From Hemiscyllium ocellatum (Eukaryota), in contig NC_083429.1 in NCBI RefSeq assembly GCF_020745735.1, forward strand, positions 16,907,877 to 16,971,876: a stretch of DNA of 64,000 nt, written 5' to 3'. Under the pieces are notes generated by a model, which saw only the letters and a list, made by a program, of their open reading frames with translations, searched no databases and was not told where the DNA came from. A program made the position numbers and the translations under genes. Below, in pieces: positions 14,145 to 45,842 of this stretch. How positions within the stretch are numbered: position 1 is the first letter of the stretch; each line of letters begins with the position of its first letter.

Positions 14145-15328
14145 GAACATAGAACAATACATCACAGAACAGGCCCTTCAGCCCACGATGTTGTGCCGAA
14201 CATTTGTCCTTCTTAAGCACCTATCCATGTACCTATCCAATTGCCACTTAAAGGTCACCAATGACTCTGACTCTGCCACTCCCACAGGCAGCGCATTCCA
14301 TGGCCCCCCACTCTCTGGGTAAAGAACCTACCCCTGACATCCCCTTCTATACCTTCCACCCTTCACCTAAAATTTATGTCCCCTTGTAACACACTGTTGT
14401 ATTTGGGGAAAAAGTCTCTGACTGTCTATCTATTCCCCTGACCATCTTATAAACCTCTATCAAATCACCCCTTGTCCTTCGCCGTTCCAATGAGAAAAGG
14501 CCTAGTACTCGCAACCTATCCTCGCACGACCTATTCTCCATTCCAGGCAACATCCTGGTAAATCTCCTCTGCACCCTCTCCAAAGCTCCACATCTTTCCT
14601 AAAATGAGGTGACCAGAACTGCACACAGTACTCCAAATGTGGCCTTACCAAGGTCCTATACAGTTGCAACATCACCTCACGATTCTTGAATTCAATCCCT
14701 CTGCTAATGAACGCTAATACACCATAGGCTGCCTTACAAGGTCTATCCACCTGAGTGGCAACTTTCAAAGATCTATAAACATAGATCCCAAGATCCCTCT
14801 GCTCCTCCACCTTACTAAGAACCCTACCATTAACCCTGTATCCCGCATTCCTATTTGTCCTTCCAAAATGGACAACCTCACACTTGACAGGGTTGAACTC
14901 CATCTGCCACTCCTCAGCCCAGCTCTGCATCATGTCTAAGTCCCTTTGCAGCCAACAACAGCCCTCCTCACTGTCCACAACTCCACCAATCTTCGTATCA
15001 TCTGCAAATTTATTCACCCACCCTTCGACTCCCTCTTCCAAGTCATTAATAAAACCTACGAACAGCAGAGGACCCAGAACTGATCCCTGCAGAACTCCAC
15101 TTGTAACTGGGCTCCAGGCTGAATATTTACCATCAACCACCACTCTCTGACTTCGGCTGGTTAGCCAGTTCTCTATCCAATTAGCAAAACTTCCCACTAT
15201 CCCATGCCTCCTGACTTTCCACATAAGCCTACCATGGGGAACCTTATCAAATGCCTTACTAAAATCCATGTACACTACATCCACTGCTCTACCCTCATCC
15301 ACATGCTTGGTCACCTCCTCAAAGAATT
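14145..15328 (-). mobile_element. Relatively young 5'-truncated CR1 LINE (RT domain)
   Basis: 270-aa ORF 14502..15314 with VDVVYMDFSKAFDKVPH, GVLQGSVLGPLLF, KFADDTK; frameshifted continuation 14374..14583; ttctatgttc tail. Confidence 0.95.
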
Positions 15329-19978: not shown

Positions 19979-21258
19979 GAAGCAAGGCAAAAAGTGGTTG
20001 ATGATGGGTCTACAAGATGTGTAAATTGGATAAACAACTCCTCACCAGTAGATGCTGTCAACAAGAAATTAAATGAGGAAAGAAGTTATGACCTTAGATT
20101 GTTGAAAGTACCTTTTTTTTTCTTCCCCCTCCATGCTGTCTCTGAACTTGTTTAAAACCTGCTCCATTTTTACCTTTTTTGAGTTGCGAAAGGTGTCATA
20201 AACTCTGTCTCTCTCTTCACAGGTGTTACTGGACTTGTTCATGACTTTAATATTCCAGCATAAGCAGTATTTTGGTTTTATGAAATACTGTCAGTCTTGG
20301 TTTGCAATTTTCATTTGGTCTCCAGGTTCAAAAGAGTTCCAGATTTTCATTGGACTATAATGTAGTGTTTCTGACATCATGCCTGAATGGCCTAACTTTA
20401 ACTTTGATACTGTGCTCAATTGTTCTTAACTCTCCCATCAATGGAAGTAACTTTTATCAAATCTTATACTTACCTTAGCCACCTCAGTTACATCATCCCT
20501 TAATTTTTTGTAATCAATGTTAATACAACCTGATCCCAGCAACCTGCTTTCCTAAGTTAACCTCATTAACTTCAGTACCATGGACAATTCTGCTCAGCAA
20601 TAGATCAGTGTTCTGACCAGAAGAAAACTTTGCACCCACTTGTGTTTCAGTTTCCTCGACATTTCAATTGATATTTATATCTGCCCACTAGCTTTGTGCT
20701 CACCCTGGATTTATGTTTCTGGATGTCTGCTTTATTTATGTGGCAAGATAAGGTCAAAAATTTAACTCCATTTGATTAACAAGACATTGGTAACTGTTGG
20801 TAAGCAGCAAACAAAACAAAATGATTTTAAACTAACAGGGTGTGTTGGAAATGCAGGGATTTCACTCTCCAAATAAATGAAGAATATCCAATCTTTTCCA
20901 AGTTATTTAGGAACATCGAAACAACTCAGCACTCAGCCCCTCAAGCCTGTTCTGTCATTCAGTGAGATCTTGGCTGATCTGTGGCTTTAGTCCATAGCCC
21001 TTAATGCATTTACTTAACATAATTTTAAATCTGAAATCAAAAAATTTAACAAAATTAAAGTGCAATCTGAGAGCAGGGAACTGCTTACAGAGCCACTTGC
21101 AAGAAAGTTATTGAACAACCTGAGAATGGCATGATATGAAATTCTTTCTGATGCCAAAACAAACGTAACTATTGGAATACTTTTCTACATAGAGTGCTAC
21201 AAGACTTGGTTTGGTTGCTTATTTAGTGGTGAATGATATGCTGTTCGTTCTTTCCTAG

Positions 21259-22521
21259 GAGAATCCAAGGTGTACAGACCTAGAAGGCCTCGGTCTAGCA
21301 GCGATGCTCTCTCTGTTTCTTTCAATGCTGGTGGGCTTCCTGGTCTCAACCACTGTAACTCATATGACAACCTACCCAATGATGAGAGTGAAAGAGAGGA
21401 AGGTGTGCACCCAATGCCTGCACTCTTGTCTTCCAGAATGGAGGATGTAGAACTGAGTCCACCCGATATGGGAGCAGCTAGTTTGGACTTCGATCCAATG
21501 TCATTTCAGTGTAGTCCACCAAGGACAGAACATGCAGGTCCTGACAGCATTTCATCTCCGGTGGATTCTTCAGCCAGTGGCAAAGACAAGTCAAATAGCA
21601 GCAAGAAGGAATCAGATTTGGGTAGTGCCTGCCTTACCCCTGGTAGTGCTACTAGTTCTGAACCAGTATCTCATTCCCCTGATAAGCTGATAAGTCCCTT
21701 CTTCTCTCCAGATCTAAGTCCCACTGATGAGAAGCTTGCTAAACCAACTTCTTTTGCAGAAAAGGTAGTTCATGCTTTCTCCCCAAAAATTGGACGCAAG
21801 TCACCCAAGTCTCCTCTGTTGACCATCTCTGAACCAATGACCATTTCTGTACCAACCCGAGTATCTGAAATGATTGGCAGTATGGCAACTGTTTCACTGG
21901 GTTCATCGCCACCTCAGACAAATCCAGCAGGGAGTGGCAATGTGAGCAAGTCACCTCCTCAAATGATGTCAATGCTGCTGAAAACTAGCGACATGCAACT
22001 ACCTGAGGGATGTCGTCAGGAGATCCACACCAAGCTTTCTGCTGCAGGGTCAGAGGCCAGAGAGCAAATCCCTGATTGGCATGATCAGACCTCTCACTAC
22101 AAGGCTATCGCGACTACCCAATCACAAGCAGCGTCAAAGTGGGAAAGCTCAAACTGGCATGAACTGACCAACCAAAACAAGACTACATCATCTACCGGTT
22201 CACAAATTGGGACTCCAGGTCAAAGTCCAGACTGGTATGAACTGACCGATCAAAACAAAACTGCACCACCCACCAATTCACAAGCTGGAATTAAAGGGCA
22301 AAGTTCAAACTGGCATGAACTGACCAATCAAAACAAGACTACACCATCTACCAATTTACAAATAGGGGCACCAGGACAAATCTTAGATTGGCATGAACTC
22401 ACCAATCAAAACAAGACTACATCATTTGCCCATTCACAATCGGAGGCAAAAGGACAAAGTCCAGACTGGCATGAACTGACCAATCAAAACAAAACAATAC
22501 CATCCACCCATTCACAAACAG
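21259..22521 (+). CDS. ARHGAP32: ARHGAP32 large coding exon (Ser/Pro-rich, contains 26-aa tandem repeat)
   Basis: tttcctAG/GTgagt; ESKVYRPRRPRSSSDALS...SYDNLP...LSPPDMGAASLDFDPMSFQCSPP...FAEKVVHAFSPKIGRK; within ORF 21270..22532. Confidence 0.93.
22065..22521 (+). repeat. In-frame 78-nt (26-aa) coding tandem repeat, about 6 units
   Basis: TGG (Trp) codons at 22077, 22155, 22233, 22311, 22389 and 22467, an exact 78-nt period; consensus S[P/S][D/N]WHELTNQNKTTPSTNSQ..xxGQ. Confidence 0.95.
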
Positions 22522-22852
22522 GTGAGTGTTGAAGCATGGTTATTACACTAGATAAGGTTCATTGGAAAAGGATCACAGAGCAAGCTACATTTCAGCTCAA
22601 ATATTGGTTGAGTTGAAAGGAATAAGTTGCAACTGGCATCTTTCAACTCTACTGTTTAGTGATAACTTCTGTCAAAGGTAATCTATTTTCACCAAAACTC
22701 AGAATACAAATCTCTGTTCTAATTTTTCTAGTATAAGTGTTTGGTCCTCAATGCTGTGAGTCATTACAATGAGAAGAAAGCCTCACATTCAGGTTTTAAA
22801 CCTCTTCTTTGGGTGTTGCACAGAGTGACTGATGTCAAGGCGGCAACAATGA

Positions 22853-23420
22853 ATATAAGACCATGAGACATAGGAACAGAAATTAGGCCATTCAGCCCAT
22901 TGAGTCTGCTCTGCCATTCAATCATGGCTAATAGGTGTCTCAACCCTATTCGCCCACTTTCTCCCCATAACCCTAGATCCCCTTGATAATCAAGAACCTA
23001 TCAATCTCCATCTTAAATATACTCAATGACCTGGCTCTCTCAGCCTTCTGTGGCAATGAATTCCATAGATTCATGACTTTCTGATGGAAGATGTTTCTCC
23101 TTTTCTCCATTTTAAAAGGTCTTCCCTTTACTCTAAGGCCACGTCTTTTTGTCCTAGGCTCTCCTACCAATGAAACATCTTTCCAACATTACTCTGTCCA
23201 GACCATTCAGTATTCTGTGCGTTTCAGTTAGATCCCTCTTCATCCTTCTAAACTCCATTGAGTATAGATCCAGAGTTCTCAAATGTTCCTCATACATTAA
23301 GCTTTTCATTCCTGGCACCATTCTCATGAACCTCCTCTGAACATGCTCCAGGGCCAATATATCCTTCCTGAGTTATGGAGCCCAGAACTGTGTACAATAC
23401 TCTAACTGTGGTCTGACCAT
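22853..23420 (-). mobile_element. CR1 3' fragment
   Basis: ORFs 23154..23357 (LEHVQRRF) and 22973..23170 (LWNSLP). Confidence 0.85.
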
Positions 23421-24464
23421 ATATGATTAAAAGGATGTGCTGTTTGCCAAAAGGAGTTTGCCAAACAAAACATGAACAGGTGCTTGACTATCTAACAAAT
23501 AATTATACATTTTCCTTTTACTTTTACCTCTTCCTCGCACACACACACACACCTTTGCAGTAATTTGTGCTGGACTATTATTTCATAATTAATGCAAGCA
23601 TTTTGGTACCACCTTGGCCCATTACAGTCCATGCATCCAAGTGCTGTTAGGGACAGTGTTCTAGAGTTTGAAGCCTGTGACATGAAAGGCAGTATCATTC
23701 ATAGGGTGGTGTGAGACTTGGAGGAAAACTTCCAGCTCATGGTGTCAACAATAATAACTTGCATGGTTTAATTCATCAATTATTTTCCTCACTTCTAACC
23801 TTATGACAGGGAGCAACTGAAGATAGTTGGGCCCTGAACAATTCTGCAGTGGTACCCTGGGACTGAGATGATTCACCTCCAACAAGCACAATCATTTTCT
23901 TTGTAGTTGATGTGACTGCAGCCAATAGAGAGTTTTCCTTGACTCCCATTGACTTAAAGGGTGTCTTCATGCCACATTCAATCAAATCCTGATTTGATGT
24001 CAAGGACTGGCACTGTCTCCCACCTCTGGCATTCAGTTTCTTTGTCCATGTGTCAGGAGCTTACAGTGGGGTAAGGAGTCACATGACTGGTGGACCCTAA
24101 GCCAAGTGTCAGTGAACAGTATTGAGTAAGTGCCACATAATAATACCATTGATAGTGCAAGAAAATTAAACCTAAAGGAGAGGGAGCAATTAAAATTCAC
24201 TGGGATGAAGGCAAGCATGAGACATTAGCATTATAAATAAGGGCTTGGAAAATATTGTGCCCAGAACATTCAGGGAAACGTAAACAATGGTTTCTGAATC
24301 GTGAATAATACTGCTAGAGTAAATTGTGAATCAATTTCAAGATTTTCACTAGAAAATTAAAGTTCGTCATGCAAGGGTTTTAGGAGAAGAAATGTTTTGC
24401 CATAAAGGATCAAAATTTAAATCATCATTTAAAATAGAATTGAACAAAGTGAAATGTAAGAAAG

Positions 24465-25970
24465 TACACCTGATCAGGTGTACCCGAGAACTCTGTGGGA
24501 AGCTAGAGAAGTGATTGCTGGGCCTCTTGCTGAGATATTTGTATCATCGATAGTCACATGTGAAATGCCATAAGACTGGAGGTTGGCAAACGTGGTGCCA
24601 CTGTTTAAGAAGGATGGTAAAGACAAGCCAGGGAACTATAGACTGGTGAGCCTGACCTCAGATGGTGGGCAAATTGTTGGAGGGAATCCTGAGGGACAGG
24701 ATGTACATGTGTTTGGAAAGGCAAGGACTGATTCGGGATAGTCAACATGACTTTGTGCGTGGGAAATCATGTCTCTCAAACTCGCTTGAGTTTTTTGAAG
24801 AAGTAACAAAGAAGATTGATGAGGGCAGAGCAGTAGATGTGATCTATATGGACTTCAGTAAGGCGTTTGACAAGGTTAGATCTCATGGAATACAGGGAGA
24901 ACTGGCTCAAAGGTAGAAGACAGAGGGTGGTGTGGAGGGTTGTTTTTCAGACTGGAGGCCCGTGACCAATGGAGTGCCACAAGGACTGGTGCTGGGCCCT
25001 CTACTTTTTGTCATTTACATAAATGATTTGGATGCGAGCATAAGAGGTACAGTTAGTAAGTTTGCAGATAACACCAAAATTGGAGGTGTAGTGGTCAGCG
25101 AAGAGGGTTAGCTCAGATTACAACAGAATCTGAACCAGATGGGCCAATGGGCTGGGAAGTGGCAAATGGAGTTTGATTCAGATAAATGCAAGGTGCTGCA
25201 TTTTGGGAAAGCAAATCTTAGCAGGACTTATACATTTAATGGAAAGGTCCTAGGGAGTGTTGCTGAACAAAGAGACCTTGGAGCGCAGGTTTGTAGCTTC
25301 TTGAAAGTGGAGTCGCAGGTAGATAGGATAGTGAAGAAGGCATTTGGTATGCTTTCCTTTATTGATCAGAGTATTGAGTACAGGAGTTGGGAGGTCATGT
25401 GGCTGTACAGGACATTGGTTAGGCCACTGTTGGAATATTGCGTGCAATTCTGGTCTCCTTCCTATCAGAAAGATGTTGTGAAACTTGAAAGGGTTCAGAA
25501 AAGATTTACAAGGATGTTGCCAGGGTTCGAGGATCTGAGCTACAGGGAGAGGCTGAACAGGCTGGGGCTGTTTTCCCTGGAGCGTCAGAGGCTGAGGGGT
25601 GACCTTATAGAGGTTTGTAAAATCATGAGGGGCACAGATAGGATAAATAGACAAAGTCTTTTCTCTGGGGTGGGCAAGTAATGAACTAGAGGGCATAGGT
25701 TTAGGGTGAGAGGGGAAAGATACAAAAGAGACCTAAAGGGCAACTTTTTCACGCAGAGGGTGGTAAATGTATGGAATGAGCTGCCAAAGGATGTGGTGGA
25801 GGCTGGTACAATTGCAACATTTAAGAGGCATTTGGATGGGTATATGAATAGGAAGGATTTGGAGGGATATGGGCTGAGTGCTGACAGGTGGGACTAGATT
25901 GGGTTGGGATATCTGGTCGGCATGGACGGGTTGAACCGAAGGGTCTGTTTCCATGCTGTATATCTCTACA
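24465..25970 (+). mobile_element. 5'-truncated CR1 LINE (RT and tail)
   Basis: ORFs 24662..24916, 25139..25681 and 25706..25897 encode CR1 ORF2 segments. Confidence 0.95.
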
Positions 25971-26193
25971 ACTTTACAAATGAAGACATTAGAACAGTTT
26001 GTACCAACCACAATCCCAGAACTGGCACTGGTATAATGAGCCGTTTGCTCTCATCCTGTGCTGTGAACCCGAATGAAGGTCCCACTGTACTGTAACATTT
26101 GTAAAAGGTTCAATTGTCTTTAGTGCACTATGCAGATTGTGCAAAGGGTTTTTTTTCATCTAATTAATGTCTGTCCTTCTATTTACTCTGCAG

Positions 26194-26564
26194 TGACACC
26201 AGTGGATTATTCAGCAGCGACTCCAGTGGAATCCCCTCAGGAGGCTCCTCCAGTTAGCTCTGTGCCTCTCCTTCCACCACCACCACCTCCAAAAAGCGCT
26301 GCTCGCTTGCTGGCGTTGGCTCTTGCTGAGAGTGCCCAGCAGGCCACTGCACAGTCTCAGAAAAAACCTCAGCCTGGGCGGCAAATCTCAGGGGATCACA
26401 ACCTTCACAACATCCCTGTTACAGACCCATGCTCAGTGTCAGCTTCTTCAGCACCTCCTACAACAGCTAGCTATCAGTTAACTGGGCAGCCAACTGTCGA
26501 ATCACAGCCTGCCACAGGCCAAGTCCCTCCTGGTACTACAGCAGGGCCCACAGCTTCAGGTCAG
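26194..26564 (+). CDS. ARHGAP32: ARHGAP32 coding exon (poly-Pro and LALALAESAQQA motif)
   Basis: atttactctgcAG/GTaagg; PVSSVPLLPPPPPPKSAARLLALALAESAQQA; phase 1 to 0. Confidence 0.9.
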
Positions 26565-27344
26565 GTAAGGATTAATCAGGGTTAATCTGTCAGTTGGACT
26601 CTGGAATTTGGTGCTTCATAGGAAATTTGATGGTGTTCCTTTGCTAAATTTTGACTGAAGGAAAACTGTTGTAAATATTCAGTTGGTCAAGCAGTTTTGC
26701 AGTTTGCATGTTTCTATCATTTATCAATATTTGAAATTGATTTCTTTGTGAGGTAGAACCAGTTGTTAGTTCGTAGGGATGTGTTCAGAGAGAAAACCTG
26801 AACAGTAAAGCTCAATATCATGAGGATTTCTCGACCGTCAACACAAGTCACCCACCCCCCAAAATGGGCATTTATTGTTCAACTAGTTAAGGTCTCCCCT
26901 CCACTTGCATCCCAGGTAATTCAGCTCAGACATTGGTTACTTTAATGCTCCAAAAATACATTCTGTGCCAAGGGCCCCCAACAAAAATGTTCCTTAGCAG
27001 AGTCTATAAGACAAAGGCAAACGAAGACGAGCCCTTGAACCTGCTCGGACATTCAGTAGGATCATGTTTGATCTGATGTCCTTCACATCAACTTTCCTGC
27101 CTTTTCTCCAGAATCTTTGATTCCCTGATTATCTCAGTTTTAAATATGCGCCAGTTCTGTGTTGCAAGGAGTTTGAAAAACTCAACTCTCTGAGAGAGGA
27201 AATTTTTCTCCATCTTAGATTGGCAGCCCTTTATTCTGGGACTATGCCTGCTCGTCCCATGAGGAGAAGCATCCTCTGCATTTACCCTGTTATCCCGTTA
27301 CATGCAGGCAACATGTACTAAACATAACATGTTGGTGGAGGTAC

Positions 27345-27590
27345 AGAAACAAAATACTATGGATTTCCAACTCTAAAATATAAACAGAAAAAGCTGGAAA
27401 TACTCAGCAAGTCATACTCTGAGAGACAGAGTTAACATTTCATATTGGCAACCTTCCGTCAGACTCTTTATCATTTTCGGTGAAAGGTTATCCAATCTAG
27501 ACATTTTACATGCTTTCTTTCCACAGATGCTGCCTGACTTGGTGACTATTTCCAGCATTAAATGTTTTATTTCAAATTTCCAGCATTGTG
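27345..27590. mobile_element. Degenerate inverted Penelope-type ends (F3-like)
   Basis: aaagctggaaatactcagc...cagagttaacatttc opposite cacagatgctgcctgac...ttccagca; similar units at about 2690-2780, 34330-34700, 55420-55625 and 57028-57125. Confidence 0.55.
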
Positions 27591-27979
27591 TTACTTTTGT
27601 GACCAATTCCAAATCGTTCCACTTGTTAAGTGAGTAGATAAGTAAACTGTACCATCCTAGACAACTTAATCTGAAAAATCTAAATCAATGTTATGGTTTA
27701 AATGTGTTCAGTATTATGGAATCGGAAAAGTAAATCCTGAACACGTACTTTCAATCTAGTCTTAAACAGTTTGCCCGGTCAATGAGGTCACATTCTGTTC
27801 GGGGGAATGAGTAAACGGCAAATCTTACTTTAAGTTTAAATTCCATGACTGCAGATAGTAAATAAGTTGTATTAAGTTTTTACAAGAATTTGAATTAATT
27901 TGAGTTTGTGCATTAGCCAGTAAGAAGTAGGCCTGCAAAGTGGAACTGCACAGAAGCTGAAATAACAGAAATTTGATTA

Positions 27980-28550
27980 CCCTTTATTGGTCAGAGTGTT
28001 GAGTACAGGAGTTGGGAGGTCATTTTGCAGCTGTACAGGACATTGGTTAGGCCACTGTTGGATCATTGCATTCAATTCTGGACTCCTTCCTATCGGAATG
28101 ATGGTATGGGTGGAGGATTTGAGCTATAGGGAGAGGTTGAATAGGCTGAGGCTGGTTTTCCCTGGAGCGTCGGAGACTGAAGGGTGACCTTATGGAGGTT
28201 TGTAAAATCATGAGAGGCATGGATAGGATAAATAGACAAACTCTTTTCTCTGGGGTGGGCAAGTAATGAACTAGAGGGTATAGGTTTAGGGTGAGGGGGA
28301 AAGATATAAAAGAAATCTAAGGGGCAATGTTTTCACGCAGAGGGTAGTATGTGTATGGAATGAGCTGCCAAAGGAAGTGGTGGAGGCTAGTACAATTGCA
28401 GCATTTAAAAGGCATCTGCATAGGTATATGAATAGGAAGGGTTTGGAAGGGTATGGACCAGGTGTTGGCAGGTAGGACTAGATTGGGTTGGACATGGATG
28501 AGTTGGACCGATTGGTTTGCTTCTGTCCTTACATCTGGATGAGTATGACA
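27980..28550 (+). mobile_element. CR1 3' fragment
   Basis: Closely similar to 25360-25960. Confidence 0.9.
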
Positions 28551-28559
28551 CTATCTGGA

Positions 28560-29380
28560 AAAGAGAAAGTGGTGGTGAGGCACCACTATGAATGCCTATA
28601 GTCTTTGTGGTGTAGGGACACCACAGTGGTGTTAGGAAGAGAATTCCAGGATTTTAACTCCACAACATTGAAGAAGCAACAATATAATTCCAAATCGTGA
28701 TGACACATGGCTTGGGGGGGGGGGCTTGCATGTTTGGGGTTTGTGTGCATCTCCTGCCTATCTCCTTCTCGGTAGTTGAGACTTAGTTTGAAAGGTGCTG
28801 TTGAAGGAGCCTTGCTGATTTACTGCAGTACATCTTGTTGTTGAAACATAGTGCTCCCACTGTGCATCAATGGTGGATGTGATGCCACTCAGGCAGGCTG
28901 CTTTGTCCTAGATCGGGTTGAGCTTCTTGATTTTTGTTGAAACTGTGCCCATCCAGGACAGGGGACAGCATTCCGTCAACTCCTGACCTCTGTGTTATAG
29001 ATGGTGGAGACAAGAGACTAAGTTACTTCTCCCAGAATTTCAAGTGCCTAATTCATTCTTGTAACCACGGTATTTATATGACGTATCCAGTAGGTTTCTG
29101 GACAATGGTAACTCCCAGAGTGTTGATCGTGGGGGATTCAGAGGTGAGAATTAATTTGAATGTTATGGAAACTTTCAAACTGCATAGTGTTTTGCCACTG
29201 CTCATGTTGACTGAGCCCACTGTCTGAGGGCTTATCCAGGGATGGTGGTGACAGTCGCTAGAAAATTGAAATAGAATTCTCTAAACTTGCCATCAGGTTG
29301 TTCCTTGACTCGTCTGTGGAGCAGCTCTTACAAGTTTGGCACAAGCTAATAGTTGTTAGTAAGTAGGGGTCTGCAGAATT
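28560..29380 (-). mobile_element. Second-family LINE 3' fragment
   Basis: Reverse-complement similarity to 8100-8570 and 10700-10985. Confidence 0.65.
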
Positions 29381-30017
29381 GGCAGCTCATTGCTGCATGC
29401 TTACTTACAAATTGAAGCAATAGGTACCTCACTTTAAATCTTCTCGTTTGCATTTATTGTCACTGTATCTCAGTCCTTTTCTGAGCCAATCATTCCTATT
29501 TCTTAAAGTTGAAAATTACTTTTAAATGTAAATATTGTTTTCACTTTTCATTGACACAACCATCCTCTTGAAGGTTTTATTGTTGCAAAGTTTAATTTAC
29601 TTCTTTCAAATGTTACAGCATTTATATTAGTTTGACTGCAAAACCACAGGCAAATTTAGCTTTTTTAATAGAGAAGCACCAGAACTATGACCTTGGGATT
29701 ACAGTTTTACGGGGATCAGAGGCGTTGAGCACTTATGCATTTCATGGTCTTGGAGAGGTCATGGCAGAAAGGCTGAAGGCAACAGAGCAAGATTCAGCTG
29801 TTGCAGGCAGGGAAACAGAGGAGGTTGGAATGCAGCTGTTTTCAAAATATTGGTCCACAGCTTCAAGCATCAAAAGGACAACTAATCTGGCTCAAGAATT
29901 GTTCATGGTATGGGGTAGCGAAGAGGAAATACTAATATTTGAAATAACATTGGAACAAAATGTTTCTTAAATCCTGGTAATCGGTTGGTTATTGCTATAT
30001 TTATTTTTCTTTTCCAG

Positions 30018-32321
30018 GTTCGGACAGCAGTTTCTGCAGGGCCTTCCTTGAAGACATCAGAGTCACGTGCTCCAGAGCAGTCGGGATCAACTTTCATCTC
30101 CGATAACAGCTATGTTACCCGCCCAACCGCAGTTATGGCCATTCACAGTGGACATCATGAGAAAACAAGAGACAACGTCCAAGCACCAGCTGTAAAACCA
30201 AGAGCTGACTCTGTGCCAGTGGATCGTAGTGCTTACAGTAACACTCCACAAGTGCCGCACCTCCGATCAGTAGAAAATCGGGTGCCTCCTAGTCATTCCA
30301 TGTCTGATACCATTAATGCCTCCAACTTCCATTCATTCCTAGCTTCAACAACCATACCATCATCTATTGAGGATGCTTTACCCCCACCTCCTCCTCCTAA
30401 ACCACCTTTTCTTTGCCAGTCACATCCCTATCATTCCAAGTTGGAAAACTTGCCAGATTTAGACAAACACTTCCAACAGAAGAATGCTCATTCAGCGCAG
30501 TCACTAGTCTACCAGTGTCGGGCTGAGAGTGTCCCCCAGCACTTGTCCTGCCAGTCTAAATCTGAGAGCACATCCCAGCATCTTTTGTATGGTACGCGTC
30601 CTGACAATATTCCCTCAGCCACATCGCGATTCAACAGTTTTTCAAGCCAGCCAAAAGCAGTGTCCGTTCACCTTTCCAAGTCTCGACTTTCAAGGTCAGA
30701 CTATGTTCCTGCCATGAGGGCATTTGTGTGCCCACATTCCCAGTTTGAGGAACCAGTGTATCCCACAATAAGACGGGTTCACTCTCTGCATGTACCTCCA
30801 TCTTCCGTAAGATCAGTTCCCATTTCAAGAACTGAGGTGCCTCCAGCTGATGAACTCTTCTATTATCAGAGACCCATCTATCAGTATAAGCCATGCCACC
30901 CACCACCACTTCAATCAGATTATCATGTTACTCAGCTGCAACCATACTTTGAAAATGGCCGAGTTCAGTACAGGTACAGCCCTTACTCCACTTCTGGGCA
31001 TAACCTACACGGAACTGATGGTGTGATTTATGATTTTGCAGATCCCTATGGTTCGATAAGACTGAGACAATTCCATTCTTTTACCAGTCGAGACATCCCA
31101 CCTTATACTGGCAGATTCCAGGGTAAAGTTTTTCCATATCCCAATGCACCTCCTTACCCACGCAGTGGTGCCCATGCCAATGCAATGAGTAGAGAGCACA
31201 GTTTTGTAAGTCGGGATGTGCCTCCATCTCCAGATGTGAAAATGACCCATATGATGTGGGATCCAGAGGAGTTGGAGAAATCCCGCTTCCAGTCCATTCG
31301 GCGTGAAATCCGCAGCCGGCAAAAGAACAAAGGCTTAGTGATGTCACAGTATGACAACGTGACCCCTGTCTTACAGGAAGAATTTGGTGGGCTAGAGATC
31401 CTGCATTCAAGAAGTAAGTCTGATCCTGGGAAAACTGGTGCCCTGGCGAGTGAGGGAAAGGAAAGGTGGTATCCTGCCACCTCAAAGACTCCTGATCCTG
31501 ATCCACCATACAGCTATCAGCAGTCAGACTGTGAACTCGATAGTGGGGCACATATCGAACCATTGGCTCTCCATCATGGATCTTTTGGAAATGGACAGCT
31601 TGAGAAACCAGCACCACCTCCGATACAAAGCACCAGCAGGACCAGGAGGCTACATGAATCTCCCTGTGATCTGTCACGGTACGATTCCTCTCAGAGGCCC
31701 TCTGCAGATTTGAAAGGGGGACAAATATACAGTGCACACACTGCAATTCCAGCAGGATATGGGTTGAAGCATCGGCCTGACCACACGGAATCACGAACAT
31801 ATCCATCTGCAACCGGTAAATATGTGCTTTCTTCTCATGAGCCTTTACGGAGTTATGAAGATTCCTTCCGGGCAGTAAGTGAAAGGCCAGAACTGGAAAG
31901 ACCCAAAGTGAGGGGGACTGGTGGGGACCATTCTTCACGAGACTACTACAGCGAGGAGGAGGAGGATCCTGCCAGGCCATTGGTATCCAACCAACCTGAG
32001 AGAAGTTACAGCACCAGATTCCAGCAGCAGCTAGAGCCTTTGGTTAGGGAACAATCTCTCTCATACCCATACCCTTGCTTAGGCCACTCGGGCAGTAAGC
32101 GGCACAGTACATTGACAGTGATGTCTCAGTATGATAACTTGGATGACTATCACACACTGTCACAGCAGCAGAGGGGAGGCCTAGGAGGAAGTGCACCATT
32201 TGTACCCCTGGGCTTCAGTCATCCTCAAGGGAGGACATTCAGCACTGCTTTAGGCCAGGGAAGCTTTGTAACAGCAGAGTTGGCATTGCAGAGGTCTGAA
32301 GCAGAGGTACATGTGGAATGA
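30018..32321 (+). CDS. ARHGAP32: ARHGAP32 terminal coding exon (to TGA)
   Basis: tttttcttttccAG acceptor; 767 codons plus TGA; conserved blocks YPTIRRVHSLH, RSVPISRTEVPP, SDYHVTQLQPYFENGRV.YRYSPY, RSKSDPGKTG, SQYDNLDDYH; C-terminus TALGQGSFVTAELALQRSEAEVHVE is ARHGAP32-type. Confidence 0.95.
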   Translation, partial: VRTAVSAGPSLKTSESRAPEQSGSTFISDNSYVTRPTAVMAIHSGHHEKTRDNVQAPAVKPRADSVPVDRSAYSNTPQVPHLRSVENRVPPSHSMSDTINASNFHSFLASTTIPSSIEDALPPPPPPKPPFLCQSHPYHSKLENLPDLDKHFQQKNAHSAQSLVYQCRAESVPQHLSCQSKSESTSQHLLYGTRPDNIPSATSRFNSFSSQPKAVSVHLSKSRLSRSDYVPAMRAFVCPHSQFEEPVYPTIRRVHSLHVPPSSVRSVPISRTEVPPADELFYYQRPIYQYKPCHPPPLQSDYHVTQLQPYFENGRVQYRYSPYSTSGHNLHGTDGVIYDFADPYGSIRLRQFHSFTSRDIPPYTGRFQGKVFPYPNAPPYPRSGAHANAMSREHSFVSRDVPPSPDVKMTHMMWDPEELEKSRFQSIRREIRSRQKNKGLVMSQYDNVTPVLQEEFGGLEILHSRSKSDPGKTGALASEGKERWYPATSKTPDPDPPYSYQQSDCELDSGAHIEPLALHHGSFGNGQLEKPAPPPIQSTSRTRRLHESPCDLSRYDSSQRPSADLKGGQIYSAHTAIPAGYGLKHRPDHTESRTYPSATGKYVLSSHEPLRSYEDSFRAVSERPELERPKVRGTGGDHSSRDYYSEEEEDPARPLVSNQPERSYSTRFQQQLEPLVREQSLSYPYPCLGHSGSKRHSTLTVMSQYDNLDDYHTLSQQQRGGLGGSAPFVPLGFSHPQGRTFSTALGQGSFVTAELALQRSEAEVHVE

Positions 32322-40444: not shown

Positions 40445-42910
40445 AAGTACAGGGAGGATGAGACAAACATGGCTGACGAGGGATGTATAAAAGCAAAAGA
40501 GAAAGCATATAATATGGTGAAGTACAGTGGAAACTAGAGGATTGGGAAGCTTACAAGTGACCAACAGATGGCAACAGAAAAAAAAATGAAAGAGAAGATT
40601 AAATATGAGTGTAAGCTAGCCAGCAATTTAAAGGAAGACTGAGTTTCTTTAGATATATAAAGGGCAAAAGAAATGAAAAAGTGCACATTATACTACTGAA
40701 AAATGACAGTGGAAAGATAGAAATAGGGAACAAAGAAATGGCTGAGGAACTGAATAATTACTTTGCATCAGTCTTCATGCTGGAAGGCGCAAATTATATC
40801 CCAAAAACTGAAGAGAATGAGGGGGCAAAGCTGAATATGGTGGCCATCGTCAAGGAGAAGGTGCTAGAAAAACTGAATGGCCTGAAGGTGGGTAAATCAC
40901 CTGGATCAGATGAACTATAGCACAGAGTCCTAAGGGAGATAGTTGAATAGATAGATATTGAAGGTGTTGGTAGTGTTCTTTCAGGAATTGCTAGAGTCAG
41001 GGAGAGTCCCAGAGGACTGGAAAATTGCTACCGTAACACCCCTGTTCAAAAAGGGAGTAGGGCAAAATATGGAAAATTACAGTCTGATTAGCCTAACCTT
41101 GGTTGTGCATAAGATCCTGGAATCCATTGTGAAGGATGAGATTTCTGAATATTTGGAAATGTATGGTAAAATAGGGTTTTATCCAGCAGAGATCATGCCT
41201 GACAAATTGCTAGAATTCTTTGAGGTCACATTTGCTTACAGTTCAAACTTTTAACCTGCTATTGTTAGTTGCTATTCATGGTTGACCACGGAGTTCCATA
41301 ATAGCAGTCTGAGAATTTGAATTCTGTTTTGTCATAAATCTAGAAATAAAAATGGTAGGTTTCCAATTTCTTCAAGCTGTCTGACCGTTGTGAAAACCAA
41401 CCTGTTCGCTGAAAGTAATTTTTGAGATTGGAAACTTACCATCCTGCTGAGTCTGGTCTACTTGCAACTGCAGGCCAAAATCATTGGGGTATTGAGTACA
41501 GGGGTTGGGAGACCATGTTGTGGCTGTACAGGATATTGCTTAGACCACTGTTGGAATATTGCATGTAATTCTGGTCTCCTTCCTATCAGAAAGATGTTGT
41601 GAAACTTGAAAGGGTTCAGAAAAGATTTACAAGAATGTTGCCAGGGTTGGAGGATTTGAGCTAGAGGGAGAGGCTGAACAGGCTGGGACTATTTTTCCTG
41701 GAGCGTCAGAGGCTGTGGGGTGACCTGATAGAGCTTTATAAAATCATGAGGGGCATGGATTGGATAAATAGACAAAGTCTTTTCCCTGGGGTGGGCAAGT
41801 AATGAACTAGAGGGCATAGGTTTAGGGTGAGAGGGCAAAGATATAAAAGAGACCTAAGGGCACCTTTTTAACGCAGAGGGTGATATGTGTATGGAATGAG
41901 CTGCCAGAGGAAGTGGTGGAGGCTGGTACAATTGCAACATTTAAGAGGCATTTGGATGGGTATATGAGTAGGAAGGGTTTGGAGGGATATGGACCTGGTG
42001 CTGGCAGGTGGGACTAGATTGGGTTGGAGTATCTGGTTGGCGTGGACAGGTTGGACTGCAGGAACGCATACCAAACATCATCTTCACTATCCTATCTACC
42101 TCCGACTCCACTTTCAAGGAGGAAGGCAAATGCAACGAAGGTGTTTATGTTGAGGGGATTCGAAGGTAGGCTGTACTTCTGAGGCTCTGGTCAGACCGCA
42201 TTTGGAGTATTGTGCACAGTTTTGGGCCCCATCTCAGGAAGAATGTAATGGCCCTGGAACATGTTCAGAGGAGGTTCATTAGAATGTCTCAGAAGTTAAA
42301 AGCTTCATATTTGAGGACACTGGGTCGATACTCAGTGGAGTTTAGAAGGCTGAGGGCAGATCAAATTGAAACTTGGAGAATACTGAATGGCTTGGACCAA
42401 GTGGATATTGGGAAGATATTTCCATTGGTAGGAAAAACTAGGACCTGAGGGCACAACCTTAGTTAAGAGAAGACCTTTTAGACCCGAGATGAGGAGACAA
42501 AGTTAAAAATCACACAACACCAAGTTATCTTCAACAGGTTTATTTGGAAACACTCGCTTTTGGAACCCAGTATCATAGAGAGGTACTCCTTTGGCTATAC
42601 ATTCTGCGAGCATGATCTTAACCTCCACATCCCCCTGATGAAGGTGCGGCATTTTGAAAGCTGGTACTTCCAAATAAACCTATTGAACTATAACCTGGTG
42701 TTGTGATTTTTAACTGTGTCCACCCCAGTACAACACCAGCACCTCCAGCTCATGGAGATCAGGAGAAAACTCTTCAGCCAGAAAGTGGTGAATCTATGAA
42801 ATTCTGCCATAGAAGGCTGTGGAAGCCAGGTCATTGAATATATTTAAATGGATATGGCTAGGTTCTTGATTGTCAAGGGTTATAGGGAGAAAGTAGGAAA
42901 TTGGGGCTGA
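40445..42910 (+). mobile_element. Cluster of nested CR1 fragments, with a SINE remnant at about 41280-41480
   Basis: ORFs 40681..40920 (ELNNYFASVF), 40958..41254 (VPEDWK) and 42212..42448 (LEHVQRRF); CR1 3' copy 41485-42060. Confidence 0.85.
42498..42754. mobile_element. F1 element inserted in CR1, with TSD
   Basis: gagatgaggaga (42486-42497) and gagatcaggaga (42755-42766) flank the inverted arms. Confidence 0.75.
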
Positions 42911-44567: not shown

Positions 44568-45842
44568 TATAGAGTCAGAGAGATGTACAACATGGAAACA
44601 GGCCCTTCGGTCCAACTCATCCAAGCCGACCAGATATCGCAACCCAATCTAGTCCCACCTGCCAGCACCCAGTCCATATCCCTCCAAACTCTTCCTAATC
44701 ATATACCAATCCAGATGCCTCTTAAATGTTGCAATTGTATTAACCTCCACCAGTTCCTCTGGCAGCTCATTCCATACATGTACCAACCTCTGCGTGAAAA
44801 TGTTGCCTTTTTTTATATCTTTGTCCTCTCACCCTAAACCTATGCCCTCTAGTTATAGACTCCCCCACCACAGGGAAAAGACTTTGTCTATTTACCCTAT
44901 CCATGCCCCTCATGATTTCATAAACCTCTATAAGGTCACCCCTCAGTCTCTGATGCTCTAGGGAAAACAGCCCTAGCCTATTCAACCTCTCCCTATAGAT
45001 TAAATTCTCCAACCCTGGCAACATCCTTTCCTGAACCCTTTCAAGTTTCACAGCATCCTTCCGATAGAAAGGAGACCAAAATTGCACGCAATATTCCAAC
45101 AGTGGCCTAACCAATGTCTTGTACAGTCGCAACATGACCTCCCAACTCCAGGTGGAGAAGCGTCACTCCAAAAGCTAGTGTGCTTCCAATTAAACCTATT
45201 GGACCACAACCTGGTGTTGTGATTTTTTAACTTTGTACACCCGGGCATCTCCAAATTTTAACTCTTATGCTCACATCCAATCATTTACATAAAGTGCACG
45301 GTAGATTAAGAAGCATCTGGACAAATGTATGAGTAGGTGGGGAGCAGAGGGATACAGATGGTAATGAATTGACTGACAGCTTTAGATAGTACATTTGGAT
45401 CGGCTCAGGCTTGGAGGGCTAAAGGGCCTGTTCCTAGCCTGAAAATTTTCTTTGTTCTAAATGATGAAAAGTAGTGGACCCAGCACTGATACTTGTGGCA
45501 CACCACTGGTCACAGGCCTCCAGTCTGAAAAAGAACCCTCCACCATCACTCTCTGTCTTCTACCTTTGAGCCAGTTCTGTATCCAAATAGCTAGTTCTCC
45601 CTGTATTCCATGGGATCTAATCTTGCTAACCAGTCTCCCATGGGGAACCTTGTCAAACACCTTATTGAAGTCCATGTAGATCACATTTACCACTCTGCCC
45701 TCATCGATGTTTTTTGTTACTTTTTAAAAAACACAAGCAAGTTTGTGAGATATGATTTCCCACGCATAAAGCCATGTTGACTATCCCTAATCAGTCCTTT
45801 CCTTTACATGTACATCCTGTCCCTCAGGATTCACTCCAACAA
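44568..45842 (-). mobile_element. CR1 LINE pieces (3' end and RT), interrupted by an F1 half-element (45151-45260) and a + CR1 tail
   Basis: ORFs 44767..45135 and 45457..45693 (YMDFNKVFDKVPHGRL...GVPQVSVLGPLLF). Confidence 0.9.

What the first reader, a model, noticed from the sequence alone, without database searches (positions are those of the whole stretch)
22065..22521. Tandem array of five WxxL (LIR/AIM-like) motifs inside ARHGAP32
Seen: an exact 26-aa periodic in-frame array at the end of the large exon, with no indels: IPDWHDQ (degenerate), SSNWHEL, SPDWYEL, SSNWHEL, ILDWHEL, SPDWHEL. The W-x-E-L-T-x-QNKT core is kept in the last five units while the S/T-rich spacers drift. Established: the ATG8-family (LC3/GABARAP) interacting motif is [W/F/Y]xx[L/I/V], favoured by upstream acidic or phosphorylatable residues (p62 DDDWTHL, Atg19 WEEL). 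The long ARHGAP32 isoform PX-RICS is a known GABARAP-binding trafficking adaptor, via its N-terminal region. From memory, human ARHGAP32 has no such repeat here. Inference: this lineage may have added a multivalent, phospho-tunable ATG8/GABARAP-binding module to a RhoGAP, a possible avidity-based autophagy or receptor-trafficking adaptor.
Basis: partly seen in the sequence, partly recalled or inferred. Interest (0 to 1): 0.78.

Follow-up and report, generated by a model that had tools for sequence, protein, structure and literature searches.

The report
Shark ARHGAP32 tandem tryptophan-motif array
A 26-residue peptide carrying a Trp-x-x-Leu motif is repeated six times in the disordered middle of the epaulette shark's ARHGAP32 (PX-RICS) protein; sharks, rays and chimaeras all have this array (3-11 copies), bony vertebrates do not, selection maintains it, and it is probably a multivalent docking site whose partner is unknown (ATG8/GABARAP is one untested candidate).

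Summary
Window 22062-22521 (+) holds six in-frame 78-bp units with no indels. They form the 3' end of an ARHGAP32 exon that ends in a consensus donor (CAG|GTGAGT). The public 2008-aa Hemiscyllium ocellatum gene model contains the array with exactly these splice junctions.

The array is not special to this species. All 16 cartilaginous-fish orthologues examined have it: chimaera 3 units, rays about 4, sharks 6-7, Heptranchias 11. The consensus is GQS[PS]DWHELTNQ[NS]KxxPSTHSQxGxK. Bony vertebrates have one homologous copy of the unit, without the Trp.

Between units in the window, the core has pN/pS 0.14 and the rest 0.84, at equal pS. AlphaFold2 predicts the array to be disordered.

The LIR reading is only partly supported. 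It is favoured by W, L and the preceding Asp being conserved while the two residues between W and L vary. It is weakened by three points:
- No unit matches the canonical LIR regular expression, and only 2 of about 70 match the extended one.
- Positions outside any LIR (Q+6, K+8, S+15, G+18, K+20) are at least as constrained.
- Units that lost W or L persist.

Binding was not tested. Best reading: an ancient, selected, multivalent linear-motif array with an unidentified partner.

The parts
22062..22521 (+). Tandem array of six 78-bp (26-aa) units, residues 965-1117 of the gene model. The last unit is completed by the first 8 nt of the next exon.
22062..22139 (+). Unit 1, a divergent variant (EQIPDWHDQTSHYKAI...). 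The same variant sits at the first position in all sharks and, modified, in rays.
22140..22217 (+). Unit 2 (WESSNWHELTNQNKTT...); Trp codon at 22155-22157.
22218..22295 (+). Unit 3 (GQSPDWYELTDQNKTA...); Trp codon at 22233-22235.
22296..22373 (+). Unit 4 (GQSSNWHELTNQNKTT...); Trp codon at 22311-22313. It is 86% identical in DNA to unit 2, which suggests partial gene conversion.
22374..22451 (+). Unit 5 (GQILDWHELTNQNKTT...); Trp codon at 22389-22391.
22452..22521 (+). Unit 6 (GQSPDWHELTNQNKTIPSTHSQT|), cut by the splice donor. It is the positional orthologue of the single-copy element of bony vertebrates.
21259..22521 (+). ARHGAP32 exon that carries the array (residues 697-1118 of the model). 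It follows an AG acceptor at 21257-21258 and starts and ends in phase 1.
22522..22527 (+). Consensus 5' splice site GTGAGT immediately after the array.
   Evidence: the junction THSQT|VTPV is present in the public model
26194..26564 (+). Next exon (residues 1118-1241). It completes unit 6 and encodes the conserved ESPQEAPPVSSVPLLPPPPPPK...LALALAESAQQ segment.
30018..32321 (+). Last coding exon (residues 1242-2008 plus the stop codon).
21951..22040 (+). Conserved element just upstream of the array (SPPQMMSMLLKTSDMQLPEGCRQEIHTKL). It is predicted as two short helices and is nearly invariant in cartilaginous fishes.

Best explanation
The array is a selectively maintained, multivalent short-linear-motif array. 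It lies in the intrinsically disordered linker of ARHGAP32/PX-RICS, between the RhoGAP/GABARAP-binding part and the poly-proline/LALALAESAQQ element.

Origin. It arose in the stem of cartilaginous fishes by tandem duplication of a 26-residue segment. Bony vertebrates still carry one copy of that segment (...SSQ[NS]K.VP[ST]G.TQ.G...DSPQ). In the cartilaginous-fish lineage the segment also acquired an exposed [DE]-W-x-x-L anchor.

Inferred mechanism. Each unit is one weak docking site, with Trp and Leu as hydrophobic anchors, Ser/Pro/Asp upstream as a possible phospho-switch, and the older Q.K...P S T . S Q . G . K part as a second determinant. Three to eleven such sites in a row would bind a clustered, oligomeric or membrane-bound partner by avidity. 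The partner is not identified. An ATG8-family protein (GABARAP/LC3) is the best named candidate and is scored separately as a rival.

Shown: existence, coding status, age, copy-number variation, purifying selection, predicted disorder, and homology to a single-copy ancestral element. Inferred: docking function and avidity.
For: - Coding. Only one of the six frames is open. A consensus donor follows the array and the phase matches the next exon. The public gene model has identical junctions. All 15 listed isoforms from four orectolobiform sharks keep six units.
- Age. The array is present in 16 cartilaginous-fish species: chimaera 3 units, rays about 4, sharks 6-7, Heptranchias 11.
- Unit individuality. 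All seven units of Cetorhinus, Scyliorhinus and Heterodontus match one-to-one by position, and each matches its counterpart better than any unit of its own species.
- Selection. Between units in the window, the core has pN/pS 0.14 and the rest 0.84, with similar pS (0.39 and 0.34). The quiet core is therefore not explained by recent homogenisation. Variable sites are 7 of 30 in the core and 28 of 48 elsewhere, Fisher p = 0.005. Trp, a single-codon residue, is kept in 62 of 69 distinct units.
- Disorder. AlphaFold2 on the 13-species alignment gives pLDDT 35-47 and no secondary structure across the array, with short helices on both flanks. There is no Pfam or PDB match.
- Ancestral element. The last shark unit aligns collinearly with the single-copy QNK.VP[ST]G.TQ.G of birds, reptiles, mammals, coelacanth and bowfin, directly upstream of the shared DSPQ...PPPPPPK flank.
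- Trp density. Seven of the protein's 17 Trp residues lie in these 156 residues.
Against: - No partner is known and no binding was tested.
- Among galeomorph orthologous units the W-core as a whole is not more conserved than the rest of the unit (3.4 against 3.5 minimum changes per column). The constraint is spread over the whole 26-mer, which could also fit a unit that folds on binding or a structural role.
- Some lineages homogenise or expand units (Pristiophorus, Heptranchias). Part of the similarity between units is therefore concerted evolution, not selection.
- The alignment behind the disorder call is shallow (13 sequences).
- The within-window pN/pS rests on 10 non-independent pairs of very short sequences.
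- No transcript contigs were found to confirm splicing directly.
Confidence: 0.65

Rival explanations
1. One reading: each unit is an LC3-interacting region. Trp would enter hydrophobic pocket 1 and Leu pocket 2 of an ATG8-family protein, with the upstream Asp and phosphorylatable Ser strengthening the contact. The array would give PX-RICS high avidity for GABARAP/LC3 clustered on membranes. This is a special case of the best explanation.
For: - Five of six units here, and 1-10 per species elsewhere, have W-x-x-L.
- The region is predicted to be disordered, as most LIRs are.
- D/E at -1 occurs in 64 of 69 units, with Ser at -2 or -3.
- In orthologous units D(-1), W and L change 1, 2 and 3 times, while X1 and X2 change 7 times each. 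That is the anchor and non-anchor pattern of Theta-x-x-Gamma.
- PX-RICS is an experimentally shown GABARAP partner.
- Multi-LIR avidity has precedent in Atg19.
- The iLIR authors note that a hexapeptide with His at position 4 (NEK9 RGWHTI) still scores high on their matrix.
- From memory: the BNIP3/NIX LIR is W-V-E-L, the same W-x-E-L type.
Against: - No unit fits the canonical LIR expression and only 2 of about 70 fit xLIR. None fits the GABARAP-selective GIM.
- X1 strongly affects binding in peptide arrays.
- The bare [WFY]xx[LIV] core is often non-functional.
- Constraint on T-N-Q-x-K, P-S-T-x-S-Q and G-x-K is not a known LIR feature, and it is as strong as on W and stronger than on L.
- Units without W or without L are conserved across four rays.
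- The mapped GABARAP-binding region (562-796) lies upstream and exists without the array in mammals.
Confidence: 0.22
2. A neutral coding minisatellite: a slippage-prone repeat tolerated in a disordered linker, with no function of its own.
For: - Copy number varies from 3 to 11.
- Heptranchias has a recent run of near-identical units, and Pristiophorus has homogenised middle units.
- Spacer codons in this species evolve almost neutrally, pN/pS 0.84.
Against: - The array is retained in chimaera, rays and all sharks sampled. From memory these lineages diverged several hundred million years ago.
- Unit-by-unit orthology holds across three shark orders.
- Core pN/pS is 0.14 at the same pS as the spacers.
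- The single-codon Trp is kept in 90% of units.
- The reading frame has never been broken in 16 species.
Confidence: 0.05
3. A regulated phospho-acceptor cluster, not a docking array. It would use repeated Ser-Pro (proline-directed kinases) and Ser-Gln sites (an SQ/TQ cluster; or, read as x-S-Q-x, weak LC8/DYNLL-type motifs) to tune the linker's charge or recruit phospho-readers.
For: - S(+15)-Q(+16) is among the best conserved pairs (62 and 55 of 69).
- The corresponding [ST]-Q is the part shared with bony vertebrates.
- S-P or S-S precedes the Asp in most units.
- There are six SQ/TQ sites in 156 residues here.
- PX-RICS function is known to be controlled by phosphorylation-dependent 14-3-3 binding elsewhere in the protein.
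Against: - It does not explain the conserved Trp, Leu, Lys(+8) and Gly positions.
- The residue after the Gln is A, M, T, V or I without preference, a poor fit to the TQT anchor of LC8 (consensus from memory).
- No phosphoproteomic data exist for sharks.
Confidence: 0.08
4. A structural or material role. The units would fold on binding into a regular repeat, or act as aromatic 'stickers' (Trp) separated by polar spacers to drive condensation at the postsynaptic density or on membranes.
For: - Constraint is distributed over the whole 26-mer, including Gly(-5), Gly(+18) and Lys(+20) at the unit joints.
- The period of exactly 26 is kept in nearly all units of 16 species.
- Trp is enriched about five-fold over the rest of the protein.
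Against: - AlphaFold2 finds no fold.
- There are only two hydrophobic residues per 26, and no PDB or Pfam relative.
- A copy number from 3 to 11 argues against a closed fold.
Confidence: 0.08

Closest known systems
Single-copy element of bony-vertebrate ARHGAP32 (e.g. ...SSSQNKTVPTGHTQPGAVALDSPQ... in birds and reptiles; the equivalent in mammals, coelacanth and bowfin)
   Same: It is homologous and collinear with the last shark unit. It shares Q-[NS]-K-x-V-P-[ST]-x-x-[ST]-Q-x-G directly upstream of the shared DSPQ...PPPPPPK...LALALAESAQQ flank.
   Different: It is present once, not 3-11 times. It has no Trp; Arg/Pro/Ile occupy the W-H-E-L positions. Its function is undescribed.
LIR/AIM motifs, and multi-LIR receptors such as yeast Atg19 with one canonical and two accessory LIRs
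   Same: A minimal W-x-x-L core with upstream acidic or Ser residues in a disordered region. Several copies in one chain could give avidity for clustered Atg8.
   Different: The units fail the canonical and extended LIR expressions and the GIM. The conserved downstream T-N-Q-x-K and P-S-T-x-S-Q have no LIR counterpart. Five to ten identical tandem copies are unlike any described LIR protein. Binding is untested.
GABARAP-binding region of PX-RICS (human residues 562-796)
   Same: It is in the same protein and the same disordered post-GAP region. It links the protein to GABARAP-dependent trafficking.
   Different: It lies about 170 residues upstream of the array, is conserved in species without the array, and contains no copy of the repeat.
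Other tandem linear-motif arrays in disordered regions: GW182/TNRC6 Trp motifs for Argonaute and CCR4-NOT, Eps15/epsin DPF/DPW arrays for AP-2, APC 15- and 20-residue repeats for beta-catenin (all from memory)
   Same: The architecture matches: many copies of a short, often Trp- or Phe-anchored motif separated by polar spacers, working by avidity, with copy number varying between lineages.
   Different: The sequence motif differs from all of them (it is not GW, DPW, WxxF or the beta-catenin consensus). None of these partners was tested.

Membership tests
LIR/AIM (ATG8-family interacting motif) | Core Theta-x-x-Gamma: [W/F/Y]-x-x-[L/I/V] | tested here: met
   WHEL x4 and WYEL x1 in the window. 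Other cartilaginous fishes have 1-10 W-x-x-L units per species.
LIR/AIM (ATG8-family interacting motif) | [quoted passage not shown] | tested here: not met
   No unit matches in 16 species. Pro/Ser/Leu sits at position 1 and His/Tyr at position 4.
LIR/AIM (ATG8-family interacting motif) | [quoted passage not shown] | tested here: not met
   No unit in Hemiscyllium matches. Only PDWQVL (Scyliorhinus torazame) and PDWQDL (Heptranchias) match elsewhere. The single mismatch is His/Tyr at position 4.
LIR/AIM (ATG8-family interacting motif) | Lies in an accessible, disordered region flanked by acidic or phosphorylatable residues | tested here: met
   pLDDT is 35-47 with no secondary structure. D/E at -1 occurs in 64 of 69 units, with Ser at -2 or -3.
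LIR/AIM (ATG8-family interacting motif) | Theta and Gamma conserved above their neighbours | tested here: inconclusive
   W (2 changes) and L (3) are more conserved than X1 and X2 (7 each). They are not more conserved than Q+6, K+8, S+15, G+18 or K+20 (0-2 changes). L is present in 71-81% of units, K+8 in 96%.
LIR/AIM (ATG8-family interacting motif) | W- and L-dependent binding to the LIR-docking site of an ATG8 protein | not testable with these tools
   No complex prediction or binding assay is available. Structure prediction takes single natural sequences only.
GABARAP interaction motif (GIM) | [W/F]-[V/I]-x-V | tested here: not met
   X1 is His/Tyr and Gamma is Leu in all units of the window.
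ARHGAP32 / PX-RICS orthologue | PX-SH3-RhoGAP architecture plus the conserved C-terminal region, with best hits to ARHGAP32 across vertebrates | tested here: met
   The window encodes residues 388-2008 of the 2008-aa model. Precomputed Pfam domains are SH3 and RhoGAP, and 312 ARHGAP32 hits were found.
Folded repeat domain (any Pfam or PDB family) | Significant profile match or a confident predicted fold | tested here: not met
   Pfam gives 0 families at E<=1 and only a chance hit at E=0.099. The best PDB match has E=0.62. AlphaFold2 finds no structure.
SQ/TQ cluster domain | At least three SQ/TQ within 100 residues (definition from memory) | tested here: met
   Six SQ/TQ sites in 156 residues. 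This is a count only; kinase targeting is not testable here.

The most novel reading that the evidence does not exclude
Cartilaginous fishes converted a single conserved linker element of PX-RICS into a 3-11-valent, phospho-tunable ATG8/GABARAP-binding array. This would give a RhoGAP trafficking adaptor avidity for GABARAP-coated membranes. It would be the first tandem LIR array of this size, and a natural experiment on valency. A related reading is also not excluded: the older half of the unit (Q.K..P[ST]..[ST]Q.G), present once in human ARHGAP32, is an undescribed docking motif, and its partner could be fished out with the shark array as an amplified bait.
Probability: 0.2. Interest if true: 0.7.

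Novelty: new variant of a known kind. Interest (0 to 1): 0.5.

Why it matters
ARHGAP32/PX-RICS is a synaptic RhoGAP and a GABARAP/14-3-3/dynein cargo adaptor linked to autism-like phenotypes in mice. Its long disordered C-terminal half is poorly understood.

The shark array shows that a 26-residue piece of that linker is functionally important. It has been kept, unit by unit, across the lineages of cartilaginous fishes sampled. It also points to a homologous single-copy element in human and other bony vertebrates that has no assigned function.

More generally, it is a clean, datable example of how a linear motif is born and amplified. The ancestral copy is still visible in the sister lineage, and the natural copy-number series (3, 4, 6, 7, 11) could be used to test how valency tunes binding.

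If the partner is an ATG8 protein, the array would be an unusual multivalent LIR. If not, it defines a new Trp-anchored motif.

Tried and rejected
- Transcript evidence. A search with residues 950-1170 for short translated contigs found only four weak hits of the proline-rich kind and no array-bearing fragment. This says nothing either way.
- Cross-species dN/dS. Orthologue DNA could not be fetched. One protein is not on record, and the Chiloscyllium and Cetorhinus genes span more than 400 kb, so no DNA is served. Only within-array codon statistics were possible.
- Known repeat family or solved peptide. Pfam and PDB gave nothing.
- Unrelated proteins with the motif. The two weak hits to the repeat part of the query in the 1.84-billion-protein search (P0033, P0038) are unrelated repetitive proteins.
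- Folded repeat domain. Rejected on the AlphaFold2 result and on composition.
- N-glycosylation sequon N-K-T. Rejected, because position +9 is Thr in only 23 of 69 units and the protein is cytosolic.
- LC8 TQT-type motif at H-S-Q-x. A poor fit, because the residue after Gln is not preferentially T or V.
- Transposon origin of the repeat. There is no other copy of the unit in the window, and the unit is homologous to ancestral coding sequence.
- Earlier notes of this scan. None exist for this place or for these words.
- Complex prediction with GABARAP.
- ELM LIR expressions. The paper consulted does not print them, so they were not used.
- Outgroup. No lamprey or hagfish orthologue was identified among the hits. 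Whether the Trp was gained in cartilaginous fishes or lost in bony vertebrates therefore rests on parsimony only. Bowfin has a lone Trp nearby.

Full report
OBSERVATION

The repeat is real. Tandem Repeats Finder reports a 78-bp period over 22153-22518 (4.7 copies, score 413) and a 156-bp higher-order period. Cutting the exon's reading frame from 22062 into 78-bp pieces gives six 26-residue units without any indel. The 32-nt core recurs four times with up to 3 mismatches, against zero expected, and occurs nowhere else in the window. Only the annotated frame is open across the array; the other five frames carry 6-12 stops each.

GENE CONTEXT

The array ends the exon 21259-22521. This exon is followed by CAG|GTGAGT and ends in phase 1. 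The next exon (26194-26564) follows a polypyrimidine-AG and starts with the two bases that complete the split codon. A search of 1.84 billion representative proteins returned a 2008-residue protein that is 100% identical over the exon. It is NCBI's 'rho GTPase-activating protein 32 isoform X1 [Hemiscyllium ocellatum]'. It has the PX-SH3-RhoGAP architecture and uses exactly these junctions (...THSQT|VTPV......TASGQ|VRTAV...). tblastn places residues 388-2008 in the window. All 15 listed isoforms of Hemiscyllium, two Chiloscyllium species and Rhincodon differ only at the N-terminus and keep six units.

DISTRIBUTION

A region-restricted search (residues 880-1180) found full coverage only in cartilaginous fishes. 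Bony vertebrates matched only the flanks. Cutting the orthologues in the 26-residue register gave these unit counts:
- Callorhinchus: 3
- Pristis, Amblyraja, Narcine: 4
- Mobula: about 3-4
- Hemiscyllium, Chiloscyllium (two species), Rhincodon, Stegostoma: 6
- Cetorhinus, two Scyliorhinus species, Heterodontus, Pristiophorus: 7
- Heptranchias: 11, including a run of near-identical units

The consensus is GQS[PS]DWHELTNQ[NS]KxxPSTHSQxGxK.

The units keep their individuality. In Cetorhinus, Scyliorhinus and Heterodontus all seven units match one-to-one by position, and each matches its counterpart better than any unit of its own species. In Pristiophorus and Heptranchias the middle units are homogenised or recently duplicated. 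In Hemiscyllium, unit 4 looks partly converted by unit 2. The array therefore predates the split of chimaeras from sharks and rays. From memory that split is several hundred million years old.

ORIGIN

In bony vertebrates the segment between SPKIGRK and LALALAES is about 150 residues, against 203-410 in cartilaginous fishes. At the place of the last shark unit they carry a single collinear element. Examples are SSSQNKTVPTGHTQPGAVALDSPQ in birds and reptiles, SSSQSKAVPSGQTQTG in a mammal, IITQSKPTPTGQTQAG in coelacanth and ELSRANQNKAHPP in Xenopus. This element sits directly before the shared DSPQ...PPPPPPK flank.

The positions shared with this element are Q+6, K+8, P+11, [ST]+15 and Q+16. These are among the most conserved positions of the shark units. 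The W-H-E-L positions are Arg/Pro/Ile-type residues in bony vertebrates. The array is thus a tandem amplification of an older conserved linker element that also gained a Trp-Leu anchor. No jawless-fish outgroup was found, so whether the Trp was gained or lost rests on parsimony.

SELECTION

Between the five good units in the window, the decapeptide D-W-H-E-L-T-N-Q-N-K has pN 0.055 and pS 0.39 (ratio 0.14). The remaining 16 codons have pN 0.29 and pS 0.34 (ratio 0.84). Synonymous divergence is the same in both parts, so the quiet core reflects selection on the peptide and not recent homogenisation. These are ten non-independent pairs of very short sequences, so the figures are indicative only.

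Across species, the information content per position is highest at K+8, S+15, Q+6 and W. Minimum change counts over the seven orthologous units of four galeomorph species are:
- K+20: 0
- G-5, D-1, Q+6, S+15, G+18: 1 each
- W, K+8, S+12, Q+16: 2 each
- L: 3
- H+1 and E+2: 7 each

Two things follow. First, D-W-x-x-L behaves like an anchored motif with free middle residues. Second, the constraint is not confined to it.

STRUCTURE

AlphaFold2 on a 13-species alignment gives pLDDT 35-47 and no secondary structure across the array. It predicts short helices in the conserved flanks SPPQMMSMLLK, EGCRQEIHTKL and ARLLALALAESAQQ. Pfam and the PDB hold nothing similar.

THE LIR HYPOTHESIS

The canonical LIR is [WFY]-x-x-[LIV] in a disordered region, often flanked by acidic or phosphorylatable residues. 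The bare core is frequently non-functional.

In favour:
- The units have the core, the Asp, the Ser and the predicted disorder.
- The conservation pattern around W and L fits an anchored motif.
- PX-RICS binds GABARAP.
- Multi-LIR avidity is documented for Atg19.

Against:
- No unit fits the canonical expression, and only two in all species fit xLIR, because of His/Tyr at X1. The iLIR authors do note a high-scoring His-containing hexapeptide.
- X1 matters for binding, and the GABARAP-selective GIM is not met.
- Strong constraint downstream of L has no LIR explanation.
- Ray unit 2 lost W (DQHELTNQNK) and ray unit 3 lost L (DWHES), yet both are kept in four rays.
- The mapped GABARAP-binding region is residues 562-796. 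This is upstream of the array and present in species that lack the array.

I put the LIR reading at about 0.2. The general reading, a selected multivalent linear-motif array whose partner is unidentified, is at about 0.65 and includes the LIR case.

VERDICT

The feature is an undescribed, ancient, cartilaginous-fish-wide variant of a known kind of thing: a tandem linear-motif array in a disordered linker. No paper in the library connects ARHGAP32 with sharks or with an LIR of this kind. Interest is moderate. The evolutionary case is unusually clean and it highlights an unstudied conserved element of human ARHGAP32, but the mechanism is untested and the organisms are not experimental models.

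Noticed in passing
P0001 residues 12-17 (N-terminal PX-isoform exon, outside the window): [quoted passage not shown] It is the only such match in the 2008-residue protein, and the N-termini of the other orectolobiform isoforms also carry DDFVRL. It may be a better LIR candidate than the array.
   Followed up: partly
window 21951-22040 (+): SPPQMMSMLLKTSDMQLPEGCRQEIHTKL, just upstream of the array, is nearly invariant in cartilaginous fishes. It is recognisable in bony-vertebrate ARHGAP32 and in ARHGAP33-like proteins, and is predicted as two short helices. It is an unannotated conserved element.
   Followed up: partly
window 22522-26193 and 26565-30017: Two introns of about 3.7 and 3.5 kb split the C-terminal coding region into three exons, and the first begins exactly at the end of the array. 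From memory the mammalian gene has one very large terminal coding exon, so these may be lineage-specific introns. This was not checked.
   Followed up: no
window 26194-26230 (+): Hemiscyllium and both Chiloscyllium species have seven more residues than Stegostoma and Rhincodon between the array and ESPQE (...SQTVTPVDYSAATPVESPQ against ...SQIVTPVESPQ). This looks like a small duplication specific to the family Hemiscylliidae.
   Followed up: partly
window 14502-15314 (-), 25139-25681 (+), 44767-45135 (-), 40958-41254 (+): Open reading frames with reverse-transcriptase-like sequence of LINE type (e.g. ...FWSP.YRKDV..LE.VQ.R...) lie in the introns of and downstream of ARHGAP32. They are decayed retrotransposon copies.
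   Followed up: no
P0045 (Heptranchias perlo) residues 1045-1200: Six consecutive units are identical or differ by one residue (GQSPDWHELTNQSK[GS]APSTHSQAGAK). This is a recent expansion that raises the array to 11 units.
   Followed up: partly
window 22140-22217 against 22296-22373: Units 2 and 4 are 86% identical in DNA and share SSN...QIG.P, unlike their counterparts in Stegostoma. This explains the 156-bp higher-order period and suggests gene conversion within the array.
   Followed up: partly
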